A stretch of 64,000 nt of DNA from NCBI RefSeq assembly GCF_002113885.1, contig NW_018406654.1:298957-362956 (forward strand), read 5' to 3'. Below are positions 25,773 to 63,987 of this stretch, in pieces. Source of the stretch: Mizuhopecten yessoensis (Eukaryota). The first letter of the stretch is position 1, and each line of letters begins with the position of its first letter. A model generated the notes under the pieces. It searched no databases, was not told the origin of the DNA, and was given only the letters and a program-made list of their open reading frames with translations. A program made the position numbers and the translations under genes.

Positions 25773-25920
25773 CCAATCGCTACAGGTATATTACAGGTAA
25801 CTCACAGGTATAGCTCAAGTAAATCTCAGGTAAGCGCTGGAAGGTATATGACGGAGACCTTTGGGACAGGTATATAAGGAGGACCGTCAGACTTGAATAG
25901 GGTTCGTCGGAGCCAGTTCT
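25773..25920 (+). promoter_or_regulatory. Core promoter of the micro-exon gene: CCAAT, 5x CAGGTA, TATA box
   Basis: ccaat 25773; caggta at 25783, 25794, 25805, 25827, 25867; tatataag 25871-25878; Inr-like ccagtt near 25913; ATG 25983. Confidence 0.7.
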
Positions 25921-25982: not shown

Positions 25983-26016
25983 ATGCTTTCGTTGGTAGTT
26001 ACAGTGGTCCTTCTCG
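25983..26016 (+). CDS. Exon 1 coding part, signal peptide MLSLVVTVVLL(G)
   Basis: aaaATG at 25983, hydrophobic run, donor g|gtaagt at 26017, phase 1; TATA box about 110 nt upstream. Confidence 0.88.
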
Positions 26017-38700: not shown

Positions 38701-41700
38701 TTGTTTTTGATAAAACTATAAATGAAATATGTATTTTTTGAATTTTGAATTACTGCATATCATATATCAAAATTCAATATGAAGGCAGGTAACTCTTTAT
38801 ATGTCACGGTTATTATGTGTAAGGTGGCATATAACCTTAAACTGACTTGTATTGGGATGATTTTGATGAGAAATGCTCGTATTTTCGACATAGTTTAAAT
38901 GCATTTAATCTAAGGTATTGCCGTTTGTACATTGGATTTGTGTTTGTCTAACACAGACATGTGCAAATTGTACTTTTTTACCTATAATCTAAAACATAAT
39001 TTTAAACTGCTTATTTTTTGCAGACCCGATCATTCCAGGTAAATATGACATATTATTTTTTTCCTCGTTAATGCAAATAAAGAAACTGATCTGAACTGAT
39101 CATGGATTCTGTATAACAGTTGCTGCCTATCGATACTGAATTGATTGGGTTTTTTTCATTTGATATTTAATTATACAATAACATACATGTACACTATTTA
39201 TATTTACGTCATATGTTTTCAGCAAGGGGACATTCGAATACCAAGGTTATAAGTAAGTACACATTTTGATACATTTATGCCACATATACCCTGTGCTATA
39301 TTTTACTAAGGAAATAACATTTACGGGAGATTATAATTTAAAGCTCCATTTCCGAATACAAATAGGAATTAGGTGTATATTTAATATTAATATCACATTT
39401 TCTGCACTGTATTTCAATTATTATAATGATTAATGTGATAGAAAAATAATGCTGACGAGCAAATCAACCACAAATGTCTCCGAATAATGCACTCTGATAA
39501 AGATATAGGGCCGTCATCACATAAATTATCAATATGGTGTATACTTACCAAGTGCCATGGAGTAAACTCAAAACATTTTGTTTACAATATCATCATGGCT
39601 GATAATGGTACATCCAGAGTACATTGTCAAAGATTTACATTTATAGATGTCAAAATAAATCTATTTGAGATGTTGAACCAAAACAGTGATTTTTATTTAG
39701 ACACAATTGCTATTCGTGTTGAACGTATGTCTGAAAAACACAGTATTTTAGTTACGAACCCTTTCTTCACTTCGGTCACACTTCGTATTATATTTGTGTT
39801 ATTTTGACCAACTGATTTAATCAGTCGTTCCATTTGCTCTGCTTTCTCATGAATCAAAACGAATATATACACCTAACAAACGAAAAAAGTAGAAAATTAT
39901 AATATGTTTTGTCTTATTTTTAAGCTGTACCGAAAGTTCATCGTGAACAAGTTGGTATACTCCACCAGGAAGCGGGTAAGTTATGTAAAACATTCCACAT
40001 CGAACGGTTATTTGCGAAGTGTATAATTCACCGTTTTGCTATTTTACAGTCCAGTATAATAAAAATGATGATAATAATAATATACAATATTTACTATTGC
40101 GCCCTATCTAGCTAGAATAAGCCACTCTGAAGCGCTTTAGAGTACATAGATATATAATTTATACAATCAAAACAACTAGCATGTACATTAATCAATGCAA
40201 TTTTGAGGAATTCGCAGGGGCTGCCTTATCAGGCGCTTACTACTGGTCCTATGCCACCTGGCTAATAGCTTATTATGTGATTGCGTGTGTGCTGGAGATG
40301 TAATGTGTAAAACAGTATTTGTCATTTTTAAGTGTTTGTATTGATTTGAAAAGCAATTATTATAACCAGTTAACTATGTGTAATGTATAATTAAAACATT
40401 GCTGTCTATCATGTAATTAAGGCGAAAAATGTGGTTATCTGTTAATGATGTAGATATGTATGTATTTTAACTTTGTGTTCACAAATAAGCAAATCAAAAT
40501 ACTTTTGCAGGGTTTTAAACAAGATAATCTGAAAATATATCAGTTTTATGGCTTATGTATATTATTTAAGAAAAACAGCTATCGTATAAAAAACAAAATT
40601 AATGGGAACGTTGTTCAAACGTGTTCAATGAAAGAACAAAATACAACAAAGAGAAAGTAAAAGCTATTGTTCAACACGTATACTAACTACATTCTTCTTT
40701 TGTAGTCCCTGTCCATCAGACACAGGTCGTGACCAATGAACGTAAGTTTAACGTATTTATTTTATACATCACAACCATTGAACACAGTGTTCATTTTTAT
40801 TGAAGTGATATTGTTCATCCAATTTAGTCTTTATTTTCGTTAACCGGCGTTATACGTTTTTTTCATTATTCAAACAGGTTGGTACTTTATATGTAATTAA
40901 CTGTTAAAGTAGATATTCTTGCGTATTAACTCACTGAACACTGAACATTTCCTGATATGCATTCACACAGATTGTTTTATAATGAGAATGCTATCATATA
41001 CGTTTAAATAGGATGACGTATCAGCTACGTCAGCATGTTTTACATGGGTACATTGTCTCACAAGTTCTGCATTTGAACAACTTTTTAATTGGAAGATAAT
41101 TTGTAATGTGTTGTTTGATTTTTTCAGGGGTGAAAATTGTAACACAAAAACAGCCTGTTCTCGTCCCACAAACCAGTAAGTAGAATTATGGTATTATTTA
41201 TCTATTAATGTAGTTATTGCAAAACATTTCTATCTCTTTGTGGAGTAGTTTTGGAGAAAGGTAACATCGGAGTATCATAATATAACCTTTTTCTTTTTCT
41301 TTTACAGGGGTTCAAAAGATTCTCCAGCAGGTACCTGTGCAAACTGTTAGTAAGTAAACATTTGTCATTTCAATTGTAAGAAAACATATAGATAATGGCG
41401 GAAATGCATCGTTTGATCTAATGTATTGCATCACAGATGGTCGAGTCCTTAATGACGAAGAAATGGTATTATTTGTGTCGCAAGTACTAATAATGAACAT
41501 TTTTTTAAATTTTTAATTACAGAAAAAGTTGCAGCGCCAATGATCTTCAAGCATAAAGGTAAACAATCCCTTGCAACGATATGTTTTATTGAATCATTTA
41601 TATACAAGTATTAATATAATAATCGTTCGATTCTGCTATAAATATTCTGGTTGCATATACCGTCTTTGCGTATTGCAGAGTTATCTTTTCTTGAGAGCAG

Positions 41701-44700
41701 GTATTGATTGTAACGTCACTTGTTTGTGAGAGTAACGTCATCATCAATTCTTGAGAAAACGACGTAATTTTCTCACACAAACCAATGACGTAACAATCAA
41801 TACATGCTCCCTAGGGAAGATAACTCGGCAATACGCAAAGACGGAATATGTACAATAAGATTATGATATCTTCGGTAAATGCTAATTCTTTGTTCATGTG
41901 ATTTGACAATAACGTTTTTCATTATGTTAATTGAGGTGTCTTTTTAATTTGTTGTCACTTTCCCTTTTCCGTATTCGAAAACGTGATATTACTTGTATTT
42001 CATAACGGATGTCTCCTTGCTATTCATTTCATTGATTATATCTTGCCCTAGTCTCATCGAGTTTAAGGTCGAACAACGGTTTTTATTTCATTTCCTTGTG
42101 ATAATTTTAGTCAAAAGGGGGATAAAAATCAATTTAAAATCTTGAAACGTAATTTTCATTTGATAGCATGCCAAATATGTCTACTATTTCAAAACGAATA
42201 ATTTCACGTAAACGGCTTTCTCCCAAAGAAAGGTTTTCGGGGGTTCGCACTAGAGTGTATGATCCATTTTCGATGGGTGCGACATGTCGTGCAGGAAATA
42301 GCTAAATGGTTATCGTGTTGGATCACTTGATGTAGTATCTATACCTTTGTGGATATTCCGGATATCTTACCTTTTCTGTTCATGGGCAAATTTTTAAAGT
42401 TTGTCTTTTTATCGGTTATTCATTGTATTCTTCAGGTTGGCGTTGTTGTACTTGCTGTGTATTGTAGTTTATAGACCCCCAAACCCCCCATGTTTTTTGT
42501 TTTTTGTTTTTTTTTAATATTTACTGACCAAAATGTGTCACTGGCAATATAATGTTACGACACCTAATTTAGATATATATTCCACTCAGATGTCATTATT
42601 CTTTATGGACAATATAGTTGTATAATATGAACATTATGGCATGGCTGTCTCATAACTTCATAACTAAATGTTGTTGATTTTGTAAATATCATTGGTCCCG
42701 TTAAATTTATGAGCCGTTGTGTTTCCGCTACGTCATGTTTTGGTGTGCTGGCTATTAATTTCTTATATTTGTTGCTTCATTTTCTTTAATTACAAATTGC
42801 TTGCATGTTGTCTATTTTTTCATTCAGAAATTGTTCCCTTCATCAAGGAAAGAACAAATCACGGTGAGTAGCTTCATCCAAGTATATACATACATAACAT
42901 TTCCCAATTTCTCAATAATATTTTTTTATCATTGATAATTTTCTCGTCCACAAATGATAATGTTGGCCTCATATCTAGATAACCTAGTTACCTAGAAAGT
43001 CTTCAATGATCTGGTCTCTCTTACGTAAAACCTCATTATATTATTTAAAGATATTGCTATCAATTAGCATTCACAATAACTACCATTTGTGTCATAATTA
43101 AACTATATATATAAGTAATATATTACTTGTATCTGCCAATTACAAACTTATTAATGTATTTTCCTTTGTGTTGTATTGCAGTTGTTCATAAAAGTAAGTA
43201 ATTTAACACAAGAAATGATAAATCTAATGAAAAGGAATTCAAAATAATGCAAACGAAATGTAACCAGCGATACTTGAATATATAATGTTCCAATCAAAAT
43301 AGTATGAAATTAATTTAAATGGTAGGGACCATTACTTTAGTCTACGGTAGACATTAAGAAACAGTACCGATAAAAATAATCGTATTTTGCAAAAAGCATA
43401 AATTACCTTCACGAATATGTTCCATGATACACAGCATATAATTATTCTTTGTTTGATTGAATGTAATGTCGTTAATTGTTAAATGGCATTGATTTGCATG
43501 GCCATGCATGTGTTGTTATTGTGTGACTGATTTTGTTTTCGTATTTATCTGCTCAAGTTGAAATTTGTTGAATTCATGTTTAATTCCTTGAAAAATATGA
43601 ATCCCTGTACCAATGCAGGCAAATACAAGGGTACCCACCTCTGTTTCTTATACATGCTGTTATTGACCTTCATCTTGTTAAGGATATGACTTAAATGCCC
43701 TATAAAAACGGAAAATAATGTGTGAACAGCTCTGAGATGACCTACGAACTATTGTATGATAAAGCGGTATATAAGAACTCGAATTATTATTATAATCATT
43801 ATTTGTTATCTTTTGTTCCCAGTTAAAGTGCCTAAGTACATAACAAACACTGTCGTGCGTAAAGGTAAGTTTTATCTATATAATTCTATATGCATGTACA
43901 TAAACAAAATCATAGCTGATGACGAAATAAGACCTGTGGTGACGTAATGCCGGATCGCAAAGGGTGCGAGATATAGTGTTATAGTTGGCTATAGAGTCTG
44001 TCTTACAAGAGTAAATTCAAGTTTTACCGCGTGTCATTTGCAATTTAGAAATTAATAATCAAGAAATGATAAGCGTGAAAACCAACTGTCTCGAGTTTGG
44101 GTTGTTTTTCCTCAAATTACGTTTATGTTGTATTTAGAAAAAAGATGATTATCTTAATTATGATGTCGCAAAATATGACGTTGAAAGTAGTGTTACTTAA
44201 CTTCATGATTAACAGATTGACCAATGAAATAACCATGTGCCAGTGGGGTCGGGTTCGACTTTCAGTTGTCATTATAATAGGTATAGGGGTGTCTTGGTCG
44301 TTTATCATTTCTCGTTGATACTAATTCCTAAATAATGGTTATAAATTTAAACTGAACGTTATTTTAAAGAATCTGATTCACAGACTGTAAAATATCAAGA
44401 GGTTTTTAAATTGATATGTTCATTGTCAAGTTGTATATGTTAGGATATTTTACCATTGTTATTTAAATTATTTGTTTCATCAAATTCCTTTGTTTTTATT
44501 TATTTTGCATTTTCATATATTTCAGTTCCCGAACCTGTTGCAATTCCAAAAATCCGTACGTATACATTGAGCTATTCAAATTGCTTATTGAACATATTTG
44601 TGAAAAATCGTTACATTTTAAGTCTTGCAGAATAGTGTCTTAACATTTTAACGTGGGTTTTCCAGGCCCTAAAATGTCTGATAGATATTTGTTGTTATGT

Positions 44701-47700
44701 CAATCTGCCATTACGCTATTTATTAAATGTGTACACAAAGTTAAAAATATTTAAAGTCATAAATGGGTTTTTTTGGAAAAGATCAAGAAGCTTTGTATGG
44801 AGAAATGTTATAACAGTGTTGTAAATGCTATGTTTTATATATTTCCGAAGCCAATATTATTATGGAACATCTTGGTTATGATTTTTCTTTTTATTCCAGA
44901 AACCAAGCACGGTGAGTAAAAAGGAACGATAATTTAAGAGGGGAAAAGTTTAAAATACGTCTTCGTTATACTTTGAAGGAAATTGGTTACAGTCCGAATT
45001 TTGACATTGTTTTTTTACCTTTAAGCAACATATATCATATTCATTTCTGGGTTCCTTATTTTGGCAGTTTAATATCTGACGATTTCTCAATACAGCATTT
45101 TGAAAATAATATCTTTGACAAATATTTCCATATTCAAAATAGTAAAACCTATTTTTGATCCGATATTCATTGTTAGTTTTTCATTTCGAGGTAATTGTAA
45201 GAAAATTTGACATGAAAAAATACACCTTTTGAAAACAACTGTAATGCGAAATTGACTTTAGTCTGGTACATATTTTAATTTGATTGAAGACGGTTCAAAC
45301 AAGAAAGCAGTTTTAGATAGGGGCTGTCTTACTATAATTTGAAATGTTTCGCCCAGAAATGAATCATGGTTAAATCTATTTCGTCTGTGATTTTAGTATC
45401 ACAATCGTAACTGAGTTAGTTGTACATTTAATCCTAACGTTCATAAAAAGGCCCATAAGGATATATTTCAATAACTGACTAAGTCAATGAGCACTGAACG
45501 AATACGTGTCTGTTTCAAACCCTGAAGTACGATATGAATAGAACAGCCAATTTGGTCCAGCGTGATGACGTTTAAGACTATTTTTCACTATCTCCTTTCT
45601 CAAGTTCATATCAATGCAATCTAGACAGTACTTCTAGAGTTACATATGTATTCAAGCTTTTGAAAACAGAGATAAGAAAAGCATCTGTTTATATATATAT
45701 GGATGTATATCAAATATTATTTTGGAAATCATATTAAATATATTATATTTCATTGTGTCATAAACAGCATGTGCATCTACTCATTTCAGTCCATCATGTT
45801 CGGACAAAGGTTGTGCATAAACACGTTCCATCTCCATGTAAGTATGAAGTACTTGCATATTAATTGTGTTATTAATTTTAAAAATGTGTATGATAATTTA
45901 TGTTGTTTATACTCAAGGGGACAAACAAATTGAGTCAATGTTCGAAAATAACGTTCAGGGTTAAGCAGATAAGTTTATAACTAGGATCATAACAGGTCAT
46001 CACGAGCTGGATATTATCTTATATGACATAACAGTGAGACATTGCAATGAAATTGTCAAAAATGTAAATCATACAAGTAATCTACCAAAACGTAAGTGGT
46101 GGTGAATTTGTATTCTTTGTAACAATATAGAAATAACCACCATACACAGAAAAATTAACAAGACAAGTGGTTCGTGTTCACATTCTAAGACCATTCATAG
46201 ATGAGTAAATCGGCATGACATTCACATCGTGAACATGAAAATACGGGTATCGTCGATATCACATCACGATAGAACATTTCGCTACAGTTTAACGTTAGTC
46301 ATGTTTGCCCTCTTCAATGAGGAAGAATTTATCATAATAGAGAATATAAGTACACAATATGTAATATTTCGTTATTACACTTGAGGCGCCAAATCAACAC
46401 TTGGCGAACATGAATGCTATCGGCAAATTGCGAAATTTACTGGGCGAAAGTTTTCTTGCATATAGTATTAATTCATAATGAATGTGTTTTGAGATCAGTT
46501 TAAAACGATATATAAATGAATAAATATTAATGGCTATTATATTGGTCCATCTGCGTATTGTTGTTTTGATATTTTACAAAAAAACGAATGTTGATTTCAT
46601 TCTCATTTCTGTTTTGTTCACAGATCGTGTCGACAGTGAGTATATTATTACGCTGAAGACTTTTTTCAATAAATAATATTCGGGACGTCATTAACATTCT
46701 AGTGATACGTAAATTAACACATGATTTGTATGATTCGTCCAAGCTCAAATTTACGCAATTAAAAGTATTAATTAATAATTTCAGGAAAAAAACTTATTTA
46801 TAAAGAATAAATTGAATCAATGTCAGTTCATGTATTTAATTAAAAATGGAACTTTGATGAACTTATTAATATTATCAAATCTATCACGTGATGCAAAAAA
46901 AGGTGTCATTTTTTTTTGTATAACCATACATAGGTTATTACATTGCTATACTCGATCAAATGTACATATCAAATCATATTTCTACTTTTAATAATACATA
47001 ATGTTCATGTTGCGTTTGTTACAGATTATGTCAAAGGTAAGTACTACTACACGAATCATTCTCGCAGAACGGCATCAACCATGTCTAAAAATTAACTAAG
47101 TCAATTGTTTTAAGAACAATCATCTTTTGATGTGATAAATTTGAACGATTTTGTAAATGTGCTGATTTTAATGCACCCTCAATATATGCTGTTGGTGATA
47201 ATCACAATGGTAATGCTCTATACTAAAAGCGCGGTAAGCGCTGAAATAAACCTACGGTTAACATTTGTTCAATTTCAGGATAAAAAAGGTTAATTTAAAA
47301 AGTCAAAGTCAATAATTTTATACTTTATCAATTTTCCTTTCAAATCACGAAATCAGGATTTTCTTTAAATATATTTGTATGCAAATATCTTTCGTGTGAC
47401 CTATGCCTGCTAATAATTAATTTTGTTTTTGTTTATTCTTCTACAGTACCAAAGCACAGTAAGTAGAGTTATCTATCTTTTATGTATATGATATATGAAA
47501 AAAAGAGAGTGAAGAGAAAAGACCTATGGAAGCTCTGAAGACCAGAACTACATTACATTAAGCGGAACATTTAAGATTTGCTAACCTGAATCTGTTCTTA
47601 AAGGACCAGCGCATTCTTAATCACGTACCTGCACATGTAAATGTAATCATTTCATAGGGAAAAATCGATTGAAAGAAGTATTTTTTTCCCTGAATTAACC

Positions 47701-50700: not shown

Positions 50701-51428
50701 CATTTGTTTTGAGATGGTCACACATCTAACTACAGATTCACTAAAATAAAATAAAAAAAGTTGTGAGAAACGTTTTATAAATCTCATGTAAAAAGGATTC
50801 CGAGGTTATGTCGTTTATCTTATTTTTGTTTGTACATGTAATTACTTTGCAAGTTAGCGCTTCGATAATTCAATAATTCTAAGTTTTTTTAACGTTCAAA
50901 ATATACATTACTGATATTTTAACAGTGTACACATTTTTCTAATATCATTTTTTTTCTTTCTTTCAGTCGTCCACACTGGTAAAAGCAGTTATTCCTTTTA
51001 ATCTTACACATCTATAATAAAAATAAAAATAAAATAAAGATATTATTCGATGCAACTCTACTTCCATTTTGACTTGGTGCGCATGCTTGTTTAATTCTAA
51101 ACGTGGAAAATGATAAATCCAAACATCTATTTTTGTCGAAATATCTGAATAAGGACTTATGTTTGTTGTCTATATAGCTGTAAAAGCAATAAAATATGAT
51201 TTTGTTTTAGTGTTTTATCTAACTACATATTATTTTTAATTTTGTTTTATTTCAGTCGCTAAGCCAATTACCAGTAAGTATTGTTTACGTCGTTTTAATT
51301 TCTTACACATTTGAGATGTATAATATATATATATAAGCCCTAGAAGGCAGAAAGGCCTAGCGGACGATCTGAAAAATTTGTTTTTATTCTATATTTTCCT
51401 TCGCAAGGACTTATTTATTTATCTATTA

Positions 51429-51472
<44 letters not shown>

Positions 51473-57400: not shown

Positions 57401-60400
57401 TGCCTGTTTATTATGTGAACATATTATAAGACAGTGACATTTTTTTTATTCTTAACTTAATAGATGTCGTGGATCGGCCGAGTAAGTAAACTTGATTTTA
57501 TCCAATGTACTTATTAACGCTCAGTTTCAATACTTAACGACATTCTGGTTGAAAATTCGATATATTGATAATCGAGAGCTGTGCATGACATCAGTTTGTG
57601 GCAACAACGTTGGTATAACTTTCGTCATTAAGAAATATAACTAAAAAAAAACAACTAATCGAAAATATGTTGTCGGTAATGTTAAAAATGTGCCTTTGTT
57701 TATGTATAAATCCTGTTATATTGCGGGGTCCGTCGCTTATTATAATTTATAATATGCAGATATGTTTTGAATGATAGTTGTTATTGGAGTAGGTAGATAT
57801 ATATTCTCCAAAGGATCATTATTATTTTTTAGGAAGTTGATAATTCAAAATAATCATATGCAAACAAAAGTCTGTTTTTATAAAAATATAATGATAGTTT
57901 AGGGGAAATAGGAGATACGAGTTCGAGCTTTGACAATTGGCTAAATTAAGACCTGTCAGTATACCTGTATGTATTTGTTTTAATATCATGCTGTTTTTCT
58001 AATCCACAGTCCCAAAAATCTGTAAGTACTAAATCAACATCAGCCTTTTTAATACAAATACCATAATATGTGATATCCTTAATATTATATATTTATATAT
58101 ATATATGGGTCTATGAGAACGTTCATGTTGTATTGGGTGCTCTTAAGATTTCTGTCGTCGATATTGACTTAAAATTAGTTTTTATACATGTAAACCGGGT
58201 AATTTTTTGTTAATTTTTTTTTAATGTTTTTAATATCTTTCTTTATACTATACATACTATGCGTTTGCCATAATTAAGTTCATACATTGTATCTTAATAC
58301 AAGTTTTATTATTTTGCTTCTTCATTTTCTACATGATTCGTACAAAAGTACTGTTATTCTTGTTAAGTAAATTCTTACTTCCTTTTGTTCAATTTCCATA
58401 TATAGCACATTTTAAAACATGTTCAAATTATATATTTCTATTATAATTGCATGTTTTATATGAATTAATATTGGTTTTTGAATGAAACACTAATTAGTTT
58501 AAAGGTAAAGTGTATCAAATTAAATCGGGAGAAGAACTCCACGCAGAAATTTGAGTGGGAGTTTTCTTCAGTCTATATAGTATTAGTAAAGGATGTGCAT
58601 CTGGCTAAGAGTAACTTCCCATATCAAGTTCCTCTTAAACTGTGTGACCTTTGAATGAGATCTTCATTTTGACGCCTTTCCTTAATAATTCATGGATCGT
58701 AAAATGTTTGAAGTGAAACATTTGCAATGTATGAGTCTTGAGTTGGACGCCTTCAGTGTTTGTGTGTTTTTAAATAAGTTACAATCATTAATTGTTTTAT
58801 CAATCATCACTCTGTAAAATGGTTCCCAGCATGTGATTTGTATGGAATACTTTCTGTGTAAAAGAGCTGTAACATATATTTTACAATAGTGGCAAAGGTA
58901 TCCTTAACACTCACTTTGCCTGCATTTAATTTTCAACCATCGCATAAGCTTACATGATTAGCTGTTTAAATATGCATTTTTGTTACGTTTTAGTTAAGAA
59001 TGATCACCATACTCAAGCGTATATTGAGATAACCAACGACTGTAACACTATGACATTATAACTTTCACATACGTTTATTATAATGTAAATATGATATAAC
59101 TTAGACACATTGAGTAGACAGCGTTATAATGATAAGGTAAAATGGGCATGGCATACCAATTGAATAGCATAACTACAATGAGAATGTATCTTTCGTAGAA
59201 TATACTATCATATTGAACTTTGATGAAACCTAACAAAAACTGTATTGTTTTTGCACAAATATTTTAACTGGTTTCATTTATTCATTTCAGTCAATCGAAT
59301 TCACACTGGTAAGTAATTATGTCGATATTTTTATTATTGTACATCTTTTAATTTTGTCTTTTTATCTAAAAGTGATACCTTCCTGTTGAGTAAATATCGA
59401 GATACATTGGTTATATCTATATCACAGGAATAAAATTGACTTACATGCAGTATAACTTGCACACAAAATATATATTTTTTTATTTAAATATATGATTGTA
59501 AATGATTTATAATCCTCCTTAATGAAACATGACATACAATATAAAAAAGGAAGAGACACGTGAGCATTATGTCAATTTAGGCTGTTTGTATTTATGCAAT
59601 TACTTTACTTGTTTATGGAAATCTGTCCCGTGTTTACAGACATTACAATTTAAATCTTAGAAATTCTTTCAAAATAATTCACTATTTATCAGGTTGAAGT
59701 TTTAAGGTTCTATACCCTCTGTATGTTATCATTGGTAATATTTGTTCTTGATCTGTAAATGCATTTGAGTTATTTCTCATTCAGATATCTGTTTTTAATT
59801 GTTGAAATTGATTTATATGTAACTGTCATTCATATTAATAATTAAGTATAATCAATGTTCTCGTTTTCTTTGAAATCTCCATGAGGTTTTTAATTCCGTT
59901 GCGTGTGTTAAAACTTTTTACTCACGACTTATGGTAGGTCCACGTAGTGATTACAAAATAAAACTATTATCCGTTTGAGTGGGTACTCGTAATCCACGAA
60001 AGTATATACCCGCGAATATACCTTTTAGGGAAACCACGAAAGTTGGTTCTCACAAAAATATCTGACGTCACCGAATGTACAATGCTGTTTGTTTATTAGC
60101 GAAATAAGAGAACCCGAATATATTATAAATACGCGATGTAGTATTCTCGTGAGATGTGCAATGATTGCACGTGTTCCAATTGAACCTATTAATTGGGATT
60201 GGTAAGAAACTTTAAAGTGAGCAGTCTCTTAACAATGATATAAAAATACAGTTGCTTAAAACTGGGATAAACCTCACGACCCAACTCACGTGGATTTGTA
60301 AATTGACTTTGATTCTTTTATTCAATTGTAAGCCTCTTACTGTTATGCATTTGTTAACTTTTATATCTAATTGTATTTTTTTTTTAAATTTCAGTTAGAG

Positions 60401-63400
60401 AAAAAATTCCAGGTAAGCATACTTTTTTTTCGCTTTTAGTCGTATTAAATGAATCATTTCATACTTATCCATTCGCCCTATATTAATGGATATATCTTTA
60501 ACATTCCATTCGTTTTCATTAGTCCATATACTCACTTTTAATGTGACATGATGATGTAAATGTTCAAAAAGGACTGAATTATTTGGATAAGATCAAGGTC
60601 AAGGTAACTGTTATTCAATATAGTTCAAGATGTTACGATTCTTGTCTCCTAATTCAAGAGATACTTACGTTTTTGAAGTATGAAATTGAGTTAAACGGTG
60701 GCAAAAGAGTTGTTTTTCTAAGGTCAAAGTCAAGGTTACTGTTACTAAAATTGGGCCATTTGGGTACAGTCAGACTTAATATGGAGTCGCAGAGACCTGA
60801 TAGTAACATTTTCATTCCCTAAATACATTATCAGACTTAGCTCTCATGAGAATCTGGAAAAAAAAGATAAAAGTAAAAGAAAGCATGACATAATTTGCAT
60901 AGTTTATACATACTATATAGTGCATTGTATATCCAATTGATATTGAACAAACGGTGACATTTAAGTCAAATAGAATACCAAATTTACCAAATACCCAAGT
61001 GATAAAAAAAAATATCACTTCGTCGTCTTGAAATTCAAAATTGGCAGATAGAAAAAGCAGAAACGTTCTAAAAAGCAACGGTAAATACATCGTACTTTCT
61101 ATTAAATAAACCATTTTTTTTTTTCATTAATTGTGTTTATTTATGTATGTATTTATGTATTTATTTATTTTTCAGTTCCATACAAGCAAACCGTGGTTCA
61201 ACAACGACCATGTAAGTTGATAAGCTCTATTGATGTGTGTGTATGCAAAATTGCTTTAAAACAAACCGGACATGGAAAAATATCAAGTTACAACCTACTT
61301 GTATCGAAATAACAATTTCTATTATATAGGCAACATATTTCTGAGATAATATATCAGTAAGAAGTATATTTTTATTTTATTTTGGAAAGTGAATGAAAAC
61401 GCTTAATTTGGTTGAAATGGTTAATTGATAAGGTTATACACTAATTTAATATCAATAATGTCATGATTCAGTTTACCTCATCTTAACAGTGTTATAATTC
61501 GATATTATTTATTATTTTACAGTTCCAGGTAAAGATGCACTCCTTCCTTGCACAGAATCACGTCAATATTTTGCCTCATGGTATATGTATCATATCAATG
61601 TGGAAAGTAATAAGGATCACTAATAAATAGTACACGAACAAAATAATGTTATTCAGATTATATAATAGTTTTCATATATGCAGCATGTTATTGAATTTTA
61701 TAGCAGCATTTTCCAAGTCCTTACCTTAGCTGCCGTGTTGTTTCTGTTATAATTAAAGATGAGTTTTACTTGCTGGTGGTATTTTATAAGTATAACACAA
61801 AATCAATCACATTTTCATTTAAAATACTATTTCAGAAATTATCCCATAGATATTTGTATATGTTAATGTTGAATTTTCTAAATGTAGTTTCATATGTAAT
61901 CCTTTGAAACGTTTTCCCCATATAATATCTTTGTATGTCGATGCATTGTATACTATTGTTTTTAATTATTTTTCTGATTTGTGTATTTATTTATGTTTCA
62001 GTTGTGCAAACAAGTAAGTATTTTCTAAATAACACAGGGCATAGTTACTATTGAAAGATCATGTGATACAAAGAGTACACAACGACAAATAGTTCTGCAT
62101 ATTTGAATAGGGAAAATGAAAAATATTGCTAAAGTACAATAGTGTAATATGCAATATTTTATATTCATTGGAAGATATCATTAACACCAAGTTACTGTTA
62201 AATACATAGATGCTACACAACGAGTACCGGGTTGATATCGTATTTATCTCACTCGAGTTAGATAATTTTCGAAAGTCACAAAAGATACGAGCTTTACTAT
62301 TATCATTTATTAATGTCATTATTGTATTACTACTTAAGCGGTGCATTCACTTTATGATCTTATTAAATGAAAAAACAATAAGAGCCACTGAACTTCATTT
62401 GAGTGTATGTGTATGGCATGGTATACCAGCCCCACATTTATACCAACACCGTCCAGCCATTACTTCATTGAACATAAACTCATTTACATAATATTAAGTA
62501 TAGTAGTTAAACCTCAGTACAGTGTCACTTGTTCTCTCGTGTATTGCCATCATATTACAGGTGCTCTTTTTCTTGAGGATCCATTCCTTTGTTTTCTTCT
62601 TAATGATTGTCAAACCCTTTTATAATGCCAAATTAAATATGGTGACGGTATAACGAGGTTTTCGTGGATCAGTTTTCTGTTTTATATTTATAACCGTTTG
62701 TATTTCTTATTTTTTTACAGAGGTGGTAGAAAGTAAGTATAGATCAATGCCGACAGTACTATATTAAAAATAGCGTTGCATGAAATATAACAAACAAATT
62801 AAGTAACTTATCAAGTAGATGTTATGTTTTTATCGGATAATTTTGCAACGAAAATTGTAAACACGAAAATCAGATGAATCGTTTGTTCCTCACCTAACAT
62901 ATCAAATATTCATTTAAGATACTCATTAGACATTGATGAGAAACATTGGTTACCTAACAGGCCTATATTTGCCTTTTTGAAATGATTAAATACACTATAT
63001 TATATAACACAATCATTTATCTGTGTAAAATATTTTGGTTTTATGATAATCATTAGATATTAATGAGAAACATTGGTTACCTAACAGGCCTATATTTGTC
63101 TTTTTGAAATGAATAAATACACTATATTATATTACACAATCATTTATCTGTGTAAATCTAAAAAGCATGTTTGAAATATGCAAAAAATTATGTATCCAAA
63201 TCAGGATTTACAAATCATAAGTCTAAGCATGTACGTGAGGAATTGGAAATCCTTTATATGAAAATATTTGTTTTGCACAAGTTGTACAATGGTATCTCAT
63301 AATCATATTTTCACATTTCTACTTTTCAGAACATATTAACCATGTACAGAAGGGTGAGTGTTAAGCCCATTAAAGTTTATTTATTATTTGTAACAAAGAT

Positions 63401-63987
63401 GTTGGGATCAATAAATAAAGTTATAGATGATGTTTGAATTTATAAATATAAAACTTTCTTTAAAAAAGAAAAGTTAAAAATAGTCGTTTGGTGTTTAAAA
63501 TCTGCCATCAATTACAACATAAATATTAACATAACAAAATTGATTGTCTTTTGATAATAATTCCGTCTTTGCGTATTGCAGAGTTATCTTCTCTTGGGAA
63601 CAGGTATTGATTGTTACGTCATTGGTTTGTGCGAGAAAATTACGTCGTTTTCTCAAAAATTGATGACGTTACTCTCGCAAACAAGTTACGTATCAATCAA
63701 TACCTGCTCCCAAGAGAAGATAACTCTGCAATAAGCAAAGACGGAATATCTCTAGGAGCGACACGATGTTAACATTTATAAAAATGACGTCATCTTAAAA
63801 AAAATGTGTTTACGGAAAGCTATGGTTTTTAAGCTTTAAATACATTTTCACTTGTAAAAAGAAATACGACAACGTTTTTTTTTTAAATTTTTGGATGCGC
63901 AATATGTTATTGATATGCTGAACCATAATTGACTCATTGTTTAATTTCTTTTTTCAGTTCCAGTAGTCCGTAATCATGTTCAAACAG
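25983..63987 (+). CDS. Micro-exon gene (at least 49 exons, 3' end beyond window) encoding a secreted Val/Lys/Pro/His-rich, articulin/alveolin-like repeat protein
   Basis: All internal exons are AG/GT-bounded, phase 1-1 and multiples of 3 nt. Spliced product (exons separated by spaces): MLSLVVTVVLL GLAAS DPSPPKSRRYGHN GPTFPI DPFPGPQ HPYRGQR HPIIP ARGHSNTKVI TVPKVHREQVGILHQEA VPVHQTQVVTNE RVKIVTQKQPVLVPQT RVQKILQQVPVQTV KKVAAPMIFKHK EIVPFIKERTNH VVHK IKVPKYITNTVVRK VPEPVAIPKI QTKH VHHVRTKVVHKHVPSP YRVD NYVK VPKH IIRN SPSP VPVK VADPKYIDRV HVKTQIVPKH IVHT VAKPIT KIKT EYKTIH KTVPIPSPMPKH FHHVKH VDRPIHHTRT VIKKVD VPKI VEKT RYHAVG VPVVKTNTVVKT NVVDRP IPKI FNRIHT VREKIP VPYKQTVVQQRP FP VVQT KVVE KHINHVQK VPVVRNHVQT. 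No stop in 1144 nt. The family label is by composition only. Confidence 0.92.
27475..27680. repeat. 46-bp tandem repeat (gagaagggagtctc...gattgagttaaaact), about 4.5 copies, with degenerate flanking copies
   Basis: Units start at 27521 and 27567; related motifs at ~27248 and ~28005. Confidence 0.9.
28341..28355 (+). CDS. Exon 2, 15 nt, GLAAS (end of signal peptide)
   Basis: tttgttgtag|gcctggccgcaagtg|gtaagt. Confidence 0.88.
31801..32010. repeat. Local tandem duplication of ~107 bp
   Basis: tattacatttaacc.agttttgctgctgta...gtgtaggataatgc occurs twice. Confidence 0.9.
33943..33970. other. Assembly ambiguity (N) next to a poly-G run
   Basis: ccn followed by 27 G; sequence, possibly including exons, could be missing here. 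Confidence 0.9.
34411..34449 (+). CDS. Exon 3, 39 nt, DPSPPKSRRYGHN
   Basis: branch-like tactaat, aaactctag|...cacaatg|gtaagt; weak pyrimidine tract. Confidence 0.7.
35223..35240 (+). CDS. Exon 4, 18 nt, GPTFPI
   Basis: cttactcag|gcccaacattccccattg|gtaagt. Confidence 0.75.
36212..36401. mobile_element. Palindromic MITE (~190 bp), TA-flanked
   Basis: Long TIRs ttccgtctttgcgtattgcagagttatcttctc / gagaagataactctgcaatacgcaaa.acggaa; four copies in the window. Confidence 0.88.
36889..36909 (+). CDS. Exon 5, 21 nt, DPFPGPQ (cassette copy 1)
   Basis: atcctcag|atccctttcctggaccccaac|gtgagt; weak acceptor. Confidence 0.65.
37726..37746 (+). CDS. Exon 6, 21 nt, HPYRGQR (cassette copy 2)
   Basis: atccccag|atccttatcgtggacaacgac|gtgagt; paralogous to exon 5. 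Confidence 0.65.
38505..38525 (+). pseudogene. Pseudo-exon, 21 nt, HTYPGIR (cassette copy 3; acceptor CAG changed to CAT)
   Basis: atgatcat|atacatatcctggaatccgac|gtgagt aligns to exons 5 and 6 but lacks the AG. Confidence 0.65.
39024..39038 (+). CDS. Exon 7, 15 nt, HPIIP
   Basis: ttttttgcag|acccgatcattccag|gtaaat. Confidence 0.85.
39223..39252 (+). CDS. Exon 8, 30 nt, ARGHSNTKVI
   Basis: gttttcag|caagg...gttataa|gtaagt. Confidence 0.87.
   Translation, partial: QGDIRIPRL
39925..39975 (+). CDS. Exon 9, 51 nt, TVPKVHREQVGILHQEA
   Basis: tatttttaag|ctgtac...gaagcgg|gtaagt. Confidence 0.87.
40058..40312 (-). mobile_element. Second copy of the L2/CR1-tail retroposon, in the intron between exons 9 and 10
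   Basis: Aligns along its length to 3424-3680; flanked by possible TSD cagtat (40052 and 40313). Confidence 0.75.
40706..40741 (+). CDS. Exon 10, 36 nt, VPVHQTQVVTNE
   Basis: tactaac branch; ttcttttgtag|tccct...gaac|gtaagt. Confidence 0.92.
41128..41175 (+). CDS. Exon 11, 48 nt, RVKIVTQKQPVLVPQT
   Basis: ttttttcag|gggtg...aacca|gtaagt. Confidence 0.92.
41308..41349 (+). CDS. Exon 12, 42 nt, RVQKILQQVPVQTV
   Basis: tcttttacag|gggtt...ctgtta|gtaagt. Confidence 0.92.
41523..41558 (+). CDS. Exon 13, 36 nt, KKVAAPMIFKHK
   Basis: ttaattacag|aaaaag...cataaag|gtaaac. Confidence 0.88.
41656..41848. mobile_element. Palindromic MITE, same family as 36212
   Basis: Same TIRs and interior. Confidence 0.88.
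42828..42863 (+). CDS. Exon 14, 36 nt, EIVPFIKERTNH
   Basis: tttcattcag|aaatt...atcacg|gtgagt. Confidence 0.92.
43182..43193 (+). CDS. Exon 15, 12 nt, VVHK
   Basis: gtattgcag|ttgttcataaaa|gtaagt. Confidence 0.88.
43823..43864 (+). CDS. Exon 16, 42 nt, IKVPKYITNTVVRK
   Basis: ttgttcccag|ttaaa...cgtaaag|gtaagt. Confidence 0.93.
44526..44555 (+). CDS. Exon 17, 30 nt, VPEPVAIPKI
   Basis: atatttcag|ttccc...aaatcc|gtacgt. Confidence 0.9.
44900..44911 (+). CDS. Exon 18, 12 nt, QTKH
   Basis: ttattccag|aaaccaagcacg|gtgagt. Confidence 0.9.
45790..45837 (+). CDS. Exon 19, 48 nt, VHHVRTKVVHKHVPSP
   Basis: ctcatttcag|tccat...tctccat|gtaagt. Confidence 0.93.
46624..46635 (+). CDS. Exon 20, 12 nt, YRVD
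   Basis: ttgttcacag|atcgtgtcgaca|gtgagt. Confidence 0.88.
47025..47036 (+). CDS. Exon 21, 12 nt, NYVK
   Basis: ttgttacag|attatgtcaaag|gtaagt. Confidence 0.9.
47447..47458 (+). CDS. Exon 22, 12 nt, VPKH
   Basis: cttctacag|taccaaagcaca|gtaagt. Confidence 0.9.
48280..48291 (+). CDS. Exon 23, 12 nt, IIRN
   Basis: ccctttgtag|ttattagaaatt|gtaagt. Confidence 0.87.
48670..48681 (+). CDS. Exon 24, 12 nt, SPSP
   Basis: ttatgaacag|ctccttccccgg|gtaagt. Confidence 0.9.
49128..49139 (+). CDS. Exon 25, 12 nt, VPVK
   Basis: cctccaacag|ttccagtgaagg|gtgagt. Confidence 0.9.
49562..49591 (+). CDS. Exon 26, 30 nt, VADPKYIDRV
   Basis: atctttacag|ttgcc...gtgtgc|gtaagt. Confidence 0.92.
49694..50243. mobile_element. 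Non-autonomous hairpin element of the same architecture, in the intron between exons 26 and 27
   Basis: Palindrome 49694-49839 centred on (cccgaggg)3; tttattacatactt 49841-49854 pairs with aagtatgtaataaa 50230-50243. Confidence 0.78.
50600..50629 (+). CDS. Exon 27, 30 nt, HVKTQIVPKH
   Basis: attttgcag|atgta...aacaca|gtaggt. Confidence 0.9.
50967..50978 (+). CDS. Exon 28, 12 nt, IVHT
   Basis: ttctttcag|tcgtccacactg|gtaaaa. Confidence 0.87.
51256..51273 (+). CDS. Exon 29, 18 nt, VAKPIT
   Basis: ttatttcag|tcgctaagccaattacca|gtaagt. Confidence 0.9.
51654..51665 (+). CDS. Exon 30, 12 nt, KIKT
   Basis: attttacag|agatcaaaacag|gtaaga. Confidence 0.88.
51919..51936 (+). CDS. Exon 31, 18 nt, EYKTIH
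   Basis: tttttttcag|aatataaaaccattcaca|gtaagt. Confidence 0.9.
52267..52302 (+). CDS. Exon 32, 36 nt, KTVPIPSPMPKH
   Basis: ttcttcaag|aaacc...aacact|gtgagt. Confidence 0.9.
52800..52817 (+). CDS. Exon 33, 18 nt, (F/I)HHVKH
   Basis: atcatttcag|ttcaccacgtgaaacacg|gtaagt. Confidence 0.9.
54022..54051 (+). CDS. Exon 34, 30 nt, VDRPIHHTRT
   Basis: cccttaacag|tcgac...gaacag|gtaaga. Confidence 0.92.
54327..54344 (+). CDS. Exon 35, 18 nt, VIKKVD
   Basis: ctcatttcag|tgatcaagaaagtggatg|gtaagt. Confidence 0.9.
54973..54984 (+). CDS. Exon 36, 12 nt, VPKI
   Basis: ttcatttcag|tacccaagatcg|gtaagt. Confidence 0.9.
55441..55452 (+). CDS. Exon 37, 12 nt, VEKT
   Basis: tgttttgcag|ttgagaagacac|gtaagt. Confidence 0.9.
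55734..55751 (+). CDS. Exon 38, 18 nt, RYHAVG
   Basis: ttcttaacag|gctaccatgcagttggag|gtgaga. Confidence 0.88.
55921..56428. mobile_element. Diverged hairpin element of the same architecture, in the intron between exons 38 and 39
   Basis: Imperfect palindrome 55921-56056; tgtcaccct 56062-56070 pairs with agggtgaca 56420-56428. Confidence 0.65.
57158..57193 (+). CDS. Exon 39, 36 nt, VPVVKTNTVVKT
   Basis: tatctttcag|tacct...aaacta|gtaagt. Confidence 0.92.
57464..57481 (+). CDS. Exon 40, 18 nt, NVVDRP
   Basis: acttaatag|atgtcgtggatcggccga|gtaagt. Confidence 0.9.
58010..58021 (+). CDS. Exon 41, 12 nt, IPKI
   Basis: aatccacag|tcccaaaaatct|gtaagt. Confidence 0.9.
59291..59308 (+). CDS. Exon 42, 18 nt, FNRIHT
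   Basis: ttcatttcag|tcaatcgaattcacactg|gtaagt. Confidence 0.9.
60395..60412 (+). CDS. Exon 43, 18 nt, VREKIP
   Basis: aaatttcag|ttagagaaaaaattccag|gtaagc. Confidence 0.9.
61176..61211 (+). CDS. Exon 44, 36 nt, VPYKQTVVQQRP
   Basis: atttttcag|ttcca...gaccat|gtaagt. Confidence 0.92.
61523..61528 (+). CDS. Exon 45, 6 nt, FP
   Basis: attttacag|ttccag|gtaaag; gives RP-FP-VV in register. Confidence 0.78.
62002..62013 (+). CDS. Exon 46, 12 nt, VVQT
   Basis: atgtttcag|ttgtgcaaacaa|gtaagt. Confidence 0.9.
62721..62732 (+). CDS. Exon 47, 12 nt, KVVE
   Basis: ttttttacag|aggtggtagaaa|gtaagt. Confidence 0.9.
62925..63156. repeat. Local tandem duplication of ~127 bp
   Basis: gagaaacattggttacctaacaggcctatatttg...tctgtgtaaa at 62938 and 63065. 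Confidence 0.92.
63330..63353 (+). CDS. Exon 48, 24 nt, KHINHVQK
   Basis: acttttcag|aacat...cagaagg|gtgagt. Confidence 0.9.
63559..63748. mobile_element. Palindromic MITE, same family, opposite orientation
   Basis: Same TIRs; interior is the reverse complement of the 36212 and 41656 copies. Confidence 0.88.
63958..63987 (+). CDS. Exon 49, 30 nt, VPVVRNHVQT
   Basis: tttttttcag-type acceptor|ttcca...caaacag|gtaata; the gene continues past the window. Confidence 0.9.

What the first reader, a model, noticed from the sequence alone, without database searches (positions are those of the whole stretch)
39223..63987. Product resembles a secreted, basic, His-rich articulin/alveolin-like structural protein
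Seen (hand count over exons 10-49, 300 aa): about 65 Val, 41 Lys, 33 Pro, 25 His, one Gly, no Cys or Trp, with recurring VPK, VPV, VDRP, KVVE and HHV motifs. Established: VPV and KVVEVP-type repeats typify protist articulins, alveolins and epiplasmins, and Val-rich alveolin-like proteins have been reported from bivalve shell matrix. Inference: this is an extracellular scaffold (shell, periostracum, byssus or ligament) in which His residues may give pH- or metal-dependent assembly. Similarity to the protist proteins may be convergent.
Basis: partly seen in the sequence, partly recalled or inferred. Interest (0 to 1): 0.7.

Follow-up and report, generated by a model that had tools for sequence, protein, structure and literature searches.

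The report
Scallop alveoline-like secreted matrix protein gene
This stretch holds most of a scallop gene made of about 50 tiny exons; it is strongly expressed in one of four RNA samples and encodes a secreted, very basic Val/Lys/Pro/His-rich protein that closely matches the pearl-oyster shell protein Alv in composition and keeps a strict two-residue rhythm.

Summary
On the + strand, 39223-63987 carries 42 phase-1 micro-exons (12-51 nt) of a gene that starts at 25983 and runs about 4.5 kb past the window.

RNA reads from one of four runs confirm exons 2-15, plus the last three bases of exon 1 joined to exon 2. A 12-nt exon is present in 403 of 406 reads. The other three runs show no exon reads.

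The product has a 16-residue signal peptide and no membrane segment. The mature core is 380 aa: V 20%, K 14%, P 10%, I 10%, H 8%, T 8%, no Cys or Trp, pI 10.6. Its composition correlates at r = 0.96 with Pinctada fucata Alveoline-like protein (Alv), an insoluble mantle-made shell matrix protein.

New here: every exon after exon 5 (46 of 46) is a multiple of 6 nt. All 35 Pro and 26 of 28 Thr sit in one alternate-residue register over 347 aa.

It does not have the 12-residue repeat of articulins and alveolins.

Tissue, presence in shell, sequence homology to Alv, exons 16-51, the 3' end and any role of His are untested. The joined model could not be sent to search tools. The scan noted this gene before (s1-507881).

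The parts
25872..25880 (+). TATA-like box (TATATAAGG) about 110 nt upstream of the start codon
   Evidence: read directly from the sequence; not tested
25983..26016 (+). exon 1 coding part: start codon and first 11 residues of the signal peptide, ends in phase 1
   Evidence: its last 3 bases precede exon 2 in the 498-read loose-end consensus
28341..28355 (+). exon 2, 15 nt, end of the signal peptide (..GLAAS)
   Evidence: located with the loose-end letters; AG/GTAAGT
39024..39038 (+). exon 3, 15 nt
   Evidence: RNA: loose end before 39220, 498 reads
   Evidence: RNA joint 39252>39925, 457 reads
   Evidence: RNA joints on both sides
40706..40741 (+). exon 6, 36 nt; the two-residue register starts here
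   Evidence: RNA joints; register
41128..41175 (+). exon 7, 48 nt
   Evidence: RNA joints
41308..41349 (+). exon 8, 42 nt; G>A at 41308 turns the junction codon Arg into Lys in about 75% of reads
   Evidence: RNA joints and tables 5/5c
41523..41558 (+). exon 9, 36 nt
   Evidence: RNA joints
42828..42863 (+). exon 10, 36 nt
   Evidence: RNA joints
43182..43193 (+). exon 11, 12 nt micro-exon, included in nearly all transcripts
   Evidence: its 12 letters lie between 42863 and 43823 in 403 of 406 reads (tables 5 and 5c)
43823..43864 (+). exon 12, 42 nt
   Evidence: RNA joints
44526..44555 (+). exon 13, 30 nt
   Evidence: RNA joint 43864>44526
44900..44911 (+). exon 14, 12 nt
   Evidence: RNA: loose end behind 44555, 478 reads, reads exon 14 then exon 15
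45790..45837 (+). exon 15, 48 nt (its first 18 nt seen in RNA)
   Evidence: loose end
46624..46635 (+). exon 16, 12 nt, predicted
   Evidence: splice sites, phase, composition, register
47025..47036 (+). exon 17, 12 nt, predicted
47447..47458 (+). exon 18, 12 nt, predicted
48280..48291 (+). exon 19, 12 nt, predicted
48670..48681 (+). exon 20, 12 nt, predicted
49128..49139 (+). exon 21, 12 nt, predicted
49562..49591 (+). exon 22, 30 nt, predicted
50600..50629 (+). exon 23, 30 nt, predicted (donor GTAGGT)
50967..50978 (+). exon 24, 12 nt, predicted, weaker donor GTAAAA
51256..51273 (+). exon 25, 18 nt, predicted
51654..51665 (+). exon 26, 12 nt, predicted
51919..51936 (+). exon 27, 18 nt, predicted
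52267..52302 (+). exon 28, 36 nt, predicted (four Pro, all in one register)
52800..52817 (+). exon 29, 18 nt, predicted
54022..54051 (+). exon 30, 30 nt, predicted
54327..54344 (+). exon 31, 18 nt, predicted
54973..54984 (+). exon 32, 12 nt, predicted
55441..55452 (+). exon 33, 12 nt, predicted
55734..55751 (+). exon 34, 18 nt, predicted
57158..57193 (+). exon 35, 36 nt, predicted (a weaker alternative acceptor at 57167 would give 27 nt)
57464..57481 (+). exon 36, 18 nt, predicted
58010..58021 (+). exon 37, 12 nt, predicted
58581..58610 (+). exon 38, 30 nt, predicted; the least certain (TAG acceptor, donor GTAACT)
59291..59308 (+). exon 39, 18 nt, predicted
60395..60412 (+). exon 40, 18 nt, predicted
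61176..61211 (+). exon 41, 36 nt, predicted
62002..62013 (+). exon 42, 12 nt, predicted
62721..62732 (+). exon 43, 12 nt, predicted
63330..63353 (+). exon 44, 24 nt, predicted
63958..63987 (+). exon 45, 30 nt, predicted; last exon inside the window. Six more predicted exons follow at window-equivalent 64334-68240, and a possible last exon from 68496

Best explanation
The stretch holds exons 4-45 of a single-copy scallop gene with 51 coding micro-exons plus a probable last exon. The gene spans window 25983 to about 68.5 kb, roughly 42 kb for about 1.2 kb of coding sequence.

Its product is a secreted protein. It has a 16-residue signal peptide, a 33-residue head, and a 347-residue core made almost only of V, K, P, I, H, T, Q and R. 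It has no Cys or Trp and almost no Gly. pI is 10.6, with K+R 71 against D+E 22 (His not counted).

I read it as the scallop counterpart of the bivalve Alveoline-like (Alv) shell matrix proteins. These are made by mantle epithelium, secreted, and built into the EDTA-insoluble organic framework of calcitic shell layers.

The core follows a strict two-residue register. One set of alternate positions holds all the Pro and nearly all the Thr. The other holds most of the Val, Gln and Arg and about two thirds of the Lys. The genome keeps this register because every exon after exon 5 is a multiple of 6 nt. Any exon gain, loss or skipping therefore changes length by whole dipeptide steps, in the way fibrillar collagen exons come in multiples of 9 nt.

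The likely physical meaning is a chain of short extended (beta) segments with two different faces and edges. One edge is interrupted by Pro. The other is free for backbone hydrogen bonds and carries Val and cationic side chains that can pair with other chains, acidic matrix proteins, chitin or carbonate.

Shown here: splicing of exons 1-15, strong sample-specific expression, the signal-peptide features, the composition and the register.

Inferred: mantle origin, deposition in shell, beta structure, binding partners, and homology (as opposed to likeness) to Alv.
For: Gene and splicing:
- 51 phase 1-1 candidate exons on the + strand against 8 on the - strand.
- In run X11 every junction between 39252 and 44526 is GT..AG with 130-720 reads each. 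The 12-nt exon 43182-43193 is present in 403 of 406 reads.
- Loose ends extend the chain to exons 1-3 and 14-15.

Expression:
- 2294 reads in X11, roughly 380 reads per kb per million by my arithmetic.
- No exon reads in X14, X16 or X21.

Secretion:
- A hydrophobic 13-residue h-region followed by A-A-S.
- The highest 19-residue hydropathy window is 2.14 in the signal peptide but only 0.83 in the mature core.

Composition and likeness to Alv:
- Composition and pI.
- P. fucata Alv has V 23.0, P 12.9, K 12.0, I 10.1, R 8.3 and H 7.8 mol%, pI 11.34, a 16-residue signal peptide and about 80% predicted beta strand. It is highly expressed in mantle and found in the EDTA-insoluble matrix (PMC6095885).
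- Pearson r between the two compositions is 0.96, against 0.23 to an average protein.
- Alv-like Val/Pro/Lys-rich proteins also occur in the calcitic fibrous prism of Mytilus (PMC4517812).

Register:
- 46 of 46 exons after exon 5 are multiples of 6 nt, in 7 distinct lengths.
- Pro splits 35:0, Thr 26:2, Gln 3:17, Arg 2:15 and Val 24:48 between the two registers (chi-square p = 3e-15).
- The RNA-confirmed part alone (exons 6-15) shows Pro 12:0 and Thr 9:1.
- 25 of the 35 Pro are internal to exons.
- The dominant spectral period of Pro, Thr and K+R is 2.0.

Age and copy number:
- No intron similarity between exon cassettes inside 39-64 kb, so the array is old.
- One copy in the genome at DNA level.
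Against: - No sequence-level homology test with Alv was possible. The spliced model has no reference, and no exon exceeds 17 codons.
- Similar composition can arise by convergence.
- The tissue of the one expressing sample is unknown, because run and sample names are coded.
- Exons 16-51 and the 3' end are predictions without RNA support.
- The candidate 51-residue tail differs in composition (it contains Cys and Trp) and has no relatives.
- The model is 1.7 times longer than P. fucata Alv, richer in Thr and Gln, and poorer in Arg.
- No open-library paper reports Alv-like proteins from scallop shell.
- Simple propensity scoring favours beta only mildly (mean 1.10 against 1.01 for helix).
- V/I do not alternate with polar residues in the manner of a classic amphipathic strand.
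Confidence: 0.62

Rival explanations
1. It is the same kind of secreted basic structural protein, but it is deposited somewhere other than the shell: byssus or foot secretion, periostracum, hinge ligament, larval shell or egg coat.
For: Only one of four RNA samples expresses it, and its tissue is unknown. Neighbouring loci on the contig carry Gly-rich small exons of the kind seen in ligament or matrix proteins. His- and Lys-rich proteins are typical substrates of quinone tanning in several molluscan secretions (my knowledge, not tested).
Against: The closest compositional match by far is a shell protein. It lacks Tyr/DOPA-rich, Gly-rich or Cys-rich features typical of byssal, periostracal and ligament proteins (Y 2.1%, G 0.8%, C 0).
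Confidence: 0.2
2. The two-residue register has no structural role. It is an inherited by-product of building the gene by amplifying primordial exons of 6n nt.
For: Micro-exon arrays grow by duplication. Exon lengths cluster at 12 and 18 nt.
Against: No intron similarity is left between cassettes in 39-64 kb, so there has been ample time for frame-preserving 3-nt changes. Yet 46 exons in 7 length classes, and 25 exon-internal Pro, never break the register. Residue classes other than Pro (Thr, Gln, Arg, Val) are partitioned as well.
Confidence: 0.25
3. It is a soluble secreted cationic His-rich effector, for example an antimicrobial or immune peptide precursor, and not a scaffold.
For: It is strongly cationic, His-rich, secreted and switched on in only one sample.
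Against: At about 380 residues it has only three dibasic sites and no Cys. It is not amphipathic. The characterised protein closest in composition, Alv, is an insoluble framework component.
Confidence: 0.07
4. It is a schistosome-type micro-exon gene whose purpose is to generate protein variants by exon skipping.
For: Signal peptide in the first exons, followed by symmetric micro-exons with long introns, as in MEGs.
Against: Inclusion is constitutive where tested: 403 of 406 reads contain the 12-nt exon, and no skipping joint reached the listing threshold. MEGs are specific to Schistosomatidae, have 10-20 exons and make proteins of up to 189 aa.
Confidence: 0.03
5. It is a true member of the articulin/alveolin (epiplastin) cytoskeletal family.
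For: VPV occurs 5 times, V+I is 30%, A+G is 3.4%, and acid-base dyads are enriched at 16 against 8.2 expected. These match descriptors in PMC6212826.
Against: It has a signal peptide. It has no 12-residue periodicity. It has no balanced acid/base content. Animals yielded no IMCp hits in the survey of PMC6212826.
Confidence: 0.02

Closest known systems
Alveoline-like protein (Alv) of pearl oysters (Pinctada fucata GenBank KP852356; P. margaritifera UniProt H2A0K6)
   Same: Both have a 16-residue signal peptide, no membrane segment, and are Val/Pro/Lys/Ile/His-rich with VP motifs. Both have almost no Gly or Ser and no Cys or Trp, and both are extremely basic (pI 11.34 against 10.6). Composition r = 0.96.
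   Different: The scallop model is about 1.7 times longer (380+ against 217 aa), has more Thr and Gln and less Arg. Sequence identity, mantle expression and presence in shell are untested here. The exon structure and residue register of Alv are not described in the papers read (no mention of exons in PMC6095885).
Alveoline-like proteins of Mytilus galloprovincialis fibrous prism (PMC4517812)
   Same: Val/Pro/Lys-rich proteins of the insoluble matrix of a calcitic layer in another pteriomorph bivalve. They share 30-40% identity with Pinctada Alv.
   Different: They are known only from ESTs and peptides. No comparison with the scallop model was possible.
Articulins, alveolins, plateins (epiplastins) of protists
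   Same: Val/Ile/Pro/Lys-rich and Ala/Gly-poor low-complexity proteins predicted to be beta strand and coil. They have VPV motifs and acid-base dyads, and plateins even carry signal peptides.
   Different: Their hallmark 12-residue repeat (VPVPV--V-- consensus, over 30 copies in Euglena articulin) is absent here. They are cytoskeletal with balanced charge, whereas this protein is secreted and polycationic. The likeness is probably convergent.
Schistosoma micro-exon genes (MEGs)
   Same: Secreted products; signal peptide first, then symmetric micro-exons separated by much longer introns; hard for gene predictors.
   Different: MEGs have 10-20 exons, mostly of 15 nt, and use alternative splicing for variation. 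This gene has 51 exons quantised in 6-nt steps and included constitutively where tested.
Fibrillar collagen genes (54-bp exon rule; my knowledge, not tested here)
   Same: Exon lengths are whole multiples of the structural repeat of the protein: 9 nt for Gly-X-Y there, 6 nt for a two-residue step here. Exon changes therefore never break the register.
   Different: The repeat, the fold and the intron phase differ (collagen exons are phase 0; these are phase 1). There is no sequence relation.

Membership tests
Bivalve Alveoline-like (Alv) shell matrix proteins | N-terminal signal peptide, no transmembrane segment | tested here: met
   16-residue signal peptide spread over exons 1-2. Maximum hydropathy window of the mature core is 0.83. 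Alv: 16 residues, no TM.
Bivalve Alveoline-like (Alv) shell matrix proteins | Val-rich, VP-repeat composition with high Lys/Arg/His and low Asp/Glu/Gly; extreme basic pI | tested here: met
   V 20.3, P 10.0, K 13.7, H 8.4, G 0.8%; VP occurs 18 times against 7.7 expected; pI 10.6; r = 0.96 with Alv Table 2.
Bivalve Alveoline-like (Alv) shell matrix proteins | Alignable sequence similarity to Pinctada Alv (30-40% identity in Mytilus members) | not testable with these tools
   The joined spliced model has no reference and may not be typed in. The longest exon is 17 codons. No Alv sequence could be obtained.
Bivalve Alveoline-like (Alv) shell matrix proteins | High, specific expression in mantle | tested here: inconclusive
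   Very high in 1 of 4 RNA runs and zero in 3, but sample names are coded, so the tissue is unknown.
Bivalve Alveoline-like (Alv) shell matrix proteins | Protein present in the (EDTA-insoluble) shell matrix | not testable with these tools
   Needs shell proteomics or antibodies.
Articulins | Core of many tandem 12-residue repeats, consensus VPVPV--V-- | tested here: not met
   Power spectra of Pro, Val, Thr and K+R peak at period 2.0. There is no peak near 12.
Articulins | More than 3 VPV modules in the low-complexity domain (threshold of PMC6212826) | tested here: met
   VPV occurs 5 times.
Epiplastins (PMC6212826) | Medial domain rich in V/I, poor in A/G, with enriched acid-base dyads | tested here: met
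   V+I 30.0%, A+G 3.4%. Dyads 16 against 8.2 expected (17 of 5000 shuffles reach it), though only 4.2 per 100 aa because acids are scarce.
Epiplastins (PMC6212826) | Encoded by an organism that builds an epiplast; cytoskeletal location | tested here: not met
   The organism is a scallop, identified from earlier scan notes, not from a check of my own. The protein has a signal peptide.
Alveolins (Pfam IMCp, PF12314) | Significant match to the IMCp profile | not tested
   The joined model could not be submitted to the family scan.
Schistosome micro-exon genes | Most of the coding sequence in symmetric micro-exons behind a signal-peptide exon | tested here: met
   All 50 junctions are phase 1. Exons are 12-51 nt, with a median intron of 559 nt.
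Schistosome micro-exon genes | Variant proteins by skipping of micro-exons; family restricted to Schistosomatidae | tested here: not met
   403 of 406 reads include the 12-nt exon, and no skipping joints are listed. The family is described as schistosome-specific.

The most novel reading that the evidence does not exclude
This is a period-2 structural protein whose register is enforced at genome level by micro-exons quantised in 6-nt steps, a beta-strand counterpart of the collagen 9-nt exon rule. The register would be functionally required for an extended, two-faced ribbon with a Pro/Thr side and a Val/Lys/Gln/Arg side that assembles into, or templates, the calcitic shell framework. The same hidden architecture may underlie Alv-like genes across bivalves, which would explain why gene predictors miss them.
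Probability: 0.3. Interest if true: 0.8.

Novelty: new variant of a known kind. Interest (0 to 1): 0.6.

Why it matters
Alv is among the most abundant proteins of the pearl-oyster prismatic layer, and blocking it disturbs prism and nacre growth (PMC6095885). One 2015 paper still described it as known only from Pinctada. A scallop counterpart would extend the family to a shell made mainly of foliated calcite (my knowledge).

The finding gives the first concrete rule for such a low-complexity matrix protein: an unbroken two-residue register written into exon lengths. That rule is directly testable in three ways: parity in orthologues, register-shift mutants, and spectroscopy. It suggests how these proteins can change length quickly without losing their structure.

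It is also a warning for annotation. A gene at several hundred reads per kb per million in one sample consists of exons as short as 12 nt.

Tried and rejected
- Homology search of the product. The joined spliced model was built and analysed only inside scripts. No single exon is long enough (at most 17 codons) for those tools.
- Candidate last exon (window-equivalent 68496 onward, 51 codons, sent by reference). It has no Pfam match. The only hits among 1.84 billion representatives are three unrelated repeat proteins. The 3' end therefore stays open, and no orthologue could be pulled in this way.
- Paralogues and haplotigs. A DNA search of the whole genome with 40690-41580 found only the locus itself. 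A scan of 100 kb on each side found no second Val/Lys/Pro/His micro-exon cluster.
- Whole-genome pattern for VPK-type 12-nt exons. It found the three expected exons here plus eight hits at C5451:41606-42684.
- Recent exon-cassette duplication inside 39-64 kb. None was found, only transposon copies.
- Literature. No paper links alveoline-like proteins with scallops, or micro-exons with bivalve shell proteins. The supplement of PMC4660305 holds no Alv sequence.
- Rejected ideas. A titin PEVK-like segment (the gene has a signal peptide and is small and self-contained). A 12-residue articulin repeat. A classic amphipathic beta strand, because V/I-x-V/I is depleted, 20 against 33.7 expected.
Full report
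**What is there**

The window is AT-rich animal DNA. It is G000:C3327:298957-362956 of a 988-Mb, 82,659-contig assembly. Earlier notes of this scan call the organism a scallop. From memory, the assembly size fits the Yesso scallop, but I did not check this.

A mechanical splice-site scan found 51 short phase 1-1 candidate exons on the + strand and 8 on the - strand. These are AG-flanked, GTRAGT-type donor, length divisible by 3, and open in the +2 frame. About 40 of the + strand candidates lie in 39223-63987.

**RNA evidence**

Four raw-read RNA runs from four studies were laid on 39000-44999.

- Run X11 gave 2294 reads confined to the predicted exons.
- Each junction is GT..AG with roughly 130-720 reads: 39252>39925, 39975>40706, 40741>41128, 41175>41308, 41349>41523, 41558>42828, 42863>43823, 43864>44526.
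- The 12 letters of micro-exon 43182-43193 lie between 42863 and 43823 in 403 of 406 reads. This 12-nt exon is therefore included in nearly all transcripts.
- The loose end behind 44555 (478 reads) reads exon 44900-44911 and then the start of exon 45790-45837.
- The loose end before 39220 (498 reads) reads the end of exon 1, then exon 2, then 39024-39038.
- I located exon 2 at 28341-28355 with those letters and read exon 1 at 25983-26016, behind a TATA-like box.
- Runs X14, X16 and X21 have no reads on any exon. Their reads lie only on transposon copies.

Expression is thus on in one sample and off in three. By my arithmetic it is about 380 reads per kb per million in X11. Sample names are coded, so the tissue is unknown. 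The library is unstranded, so the strand follows from the splice sites.

**Gene model**

With 40 kb of downstream sequence, the chain continues for six more exons, to window-equivalent 68217-68240.

A strong acceptor at 68496 would add a 51-residue tail, a stop codon and an AATAAA about 370 nt further on. This tail has no Pfam hit and no real relatives, so the 3' end is open.

In total there are 51 coding exons of 12-51 nt. All 50 junctions are phase 1. Of the donors, 39 of 51 are GTAAGT or GTGAGT. The median intron is 559 nt. GC content is 42% in exons against 30% in introns. Exons 16-51 rest on splice signals, phase, composition and register only.

The gene is single-copy at DNA level. There is no similar cluster within 100 kb on either side, and there are no recent cassette duplications inside 39-64 kb.

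**The product**

I joined the exons only inside scripts, from referenced files.

- The N-terminus has a 13-residue hydrophobic stretch followed by A-A-S. This is a standard 16-residue signal peptide, and the mature protein starts at Asp17.
- The mature core is 380 aa: V 20.3, K 13.7, P 10.0, I 9.7, H 8.4, T 7.9, Q 5.8, R 5.0, G 0.8%. It has no Cys or Trp. pI is 10.6, with K+R 71 against D+E 22.
- No 19-residue window of the mature core is hydrophobic enough for a membrane span. There are no N-glycosylation sequons and only three dibasic sites.

**The new observation**

All 46 exons after exon 5 are multiples of 6 nt, in seven different lengths (12, 18, 24, 30, 36, 42, 48). Among exons divisible by 3, half would be expected to be multiples of 6.

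Accordingly, the 347-residue core keeps one unbroken two-residue register.

| Residue | Register A | Register B |
|---|---|---|
| Pro | 35 | 0 |
| Thr | 26 | 2 |
| Val | 24 | 48 |
| Lys | 18 | 32 |
| Gln | 3 | 17 |
| Arg | 2 | 15 |

- The chi-square p value for the partition is 3e-15. The Lys split on its own is not significant (binomial p 0.065).
- The pattern holds separately in the RNA-confirmed exons 6-15 (Pro 12:0, Thr 9:1) and in the predicted part (Pro 23:0, Thr 17:1).
- 25 of the 35 Pro are internal to exons, so the pattern is not an artefact of exon starts.
- Power spectra of Pro, Thr and K+R peak at period 2.0, and nothing stands out near 12.
- I chose exons on splice strength, divisibility by 3 and composition, not on parity. 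Candidates of 6n+3 nt in the region all have weak sites or are weaker alternative acceptors inside chosen exons.
- Because the introns no longer resemble each other, the array is old, and unbroken parity points to selection. I give 25% to the rival view that it is an inherited accident.

**What it most likely is**

The closest known protein is the Alveoline-like protein (Alv) of pearl oysters.

- Alv has a 16-residue signal peptide and 217 mature residues, with V 23.0, P 12.9, K 12.0, I 10.1, R 8.3, H 7.8 and G 1.4 mol%. Cys and Trp are not listed.
- Its pI is 11.34, it has VP repeats, and about 80% of it is predicted as beta strand.
- It is 1000 to 10000 times higher in mantle than in muscle and among the most abundant proteins of the prismatic layer. 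It is located in the EDTA-insoluble matrix, and antibody injection disrupts prisms (PMC6095885 and PMC4660305).
- The scallop composition correlates with Alv Table 2 at r = 0.96. Both correlate at under 0.3 with an average protein.
- Val/Pro/Lys-rich Alv-like proteins are also abundant in the calcitic fibrous prism of Mytilus (PMC4517812).

I therefore read this gene as the scallop counterpart: a polycationic, beta-prone framework protein of the shell matrix.

The register suggests short extended segments with two unlike sides, separated by Pro about every ten residues. In a beta strand, alternate residues point to opposite faces and hydrogen-bond to opposite neighbours (textbook knowledge). 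Putting every Pro on one side would therefore leave the other side free for pairing. This is inference.

The many Lys and His could equally serve charge pairing with acidic matrix proteins, metal binding, or quinone cross-linking. Nothing here tests that. Only H..H spacing is enriched.

**Comparison with the protist proteins**

The model meets loose epiplastin descriptors:

- V+I is 30% and A+G is 3.4%.
- VPV occurs 5 times.
- Acid-base dyads number 16 against 8.2 expected.

It fails the defining features:

- It has no 12-residue repeat.
- It is secreted, not cytoskeletal.
- It is strongly basic.
- A published IMCp survey recovered no animal proteins.

In gene architecture it resembles schistosome micro-exon genes. 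However, it has far more exons, a 6-nt quantum, and constitutive inclusion where tested. The nearest analogy for exon lengths matching a structural repeat is the collagen 9-nt rule (my knowledge).

**Limits**

- The joined model was not sent to any search, family or fold tool, so homology to Alv and the IMCp test remain open.
- One N at 33943, beside a poly-G run, was left untouched.

Noticed in passing
window 36220-36400, 41657-41849, 63560-63749: Copies of a short inverted-repeat (MITE-like) element lie in introns of the gene. They are transcribed in all four RNA runs (depth 8-26), with 'opposite strands' joints that suggest hairpin transcripts, independently of the host gene.
   Followed up: partly
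same contig, window-equivalent -64262..-64146 and +85324..+87567: Small phase-1 exons encode Gly/Ser/Leu/Ile-rich and Gly/Ala/Met-rich peptides. The neighbours may be other low-complexity secreted structural genes.
   Followed up: no
G000:C5451:41606-42684: Eight copies of CAG|TACCAAAACCTG|GTGAGT, which would read (V)PKP as 12-nt phase-1 exons, are spaced by multiples of 44 nt. This is either another micro-exon array or a minisatellite that mimics one. It could not be fetched.
   Followed up: no
window 39962 and 41308: The expressing sample differs from the assembly at two places. C>T at 39962 is synonymous (Leu). G>A at 41308 turns the split junction codon AGG (Arg) into AAG (Lys) in about 75% of reads.
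   Followed up: partly
window 35213-35240, 36889-36909, 37725-37745: Exon-like pieces in the 10.7-kb intron 2 (the triplicated cassette of note s1-507965) are not part of the transcript consensus in run X11. Two of them are 21 nt, not a multiple of 6.
   Followed up: partly
window 25782-25832: A 22-nt motif is repeated 2.3 times about 50-100 nt upstream of the TATA-like box of the gene. It is a possible regulatory site.
   Followed up: no
window 1-1041 and 21753-22621: There is a 20-nt satellite (51 copies) at the window start. A 39-nt tandem repeat (22 copies) carries a 323-codon open frame on the - strand. Neither is related to the gene.
   Followed up: no
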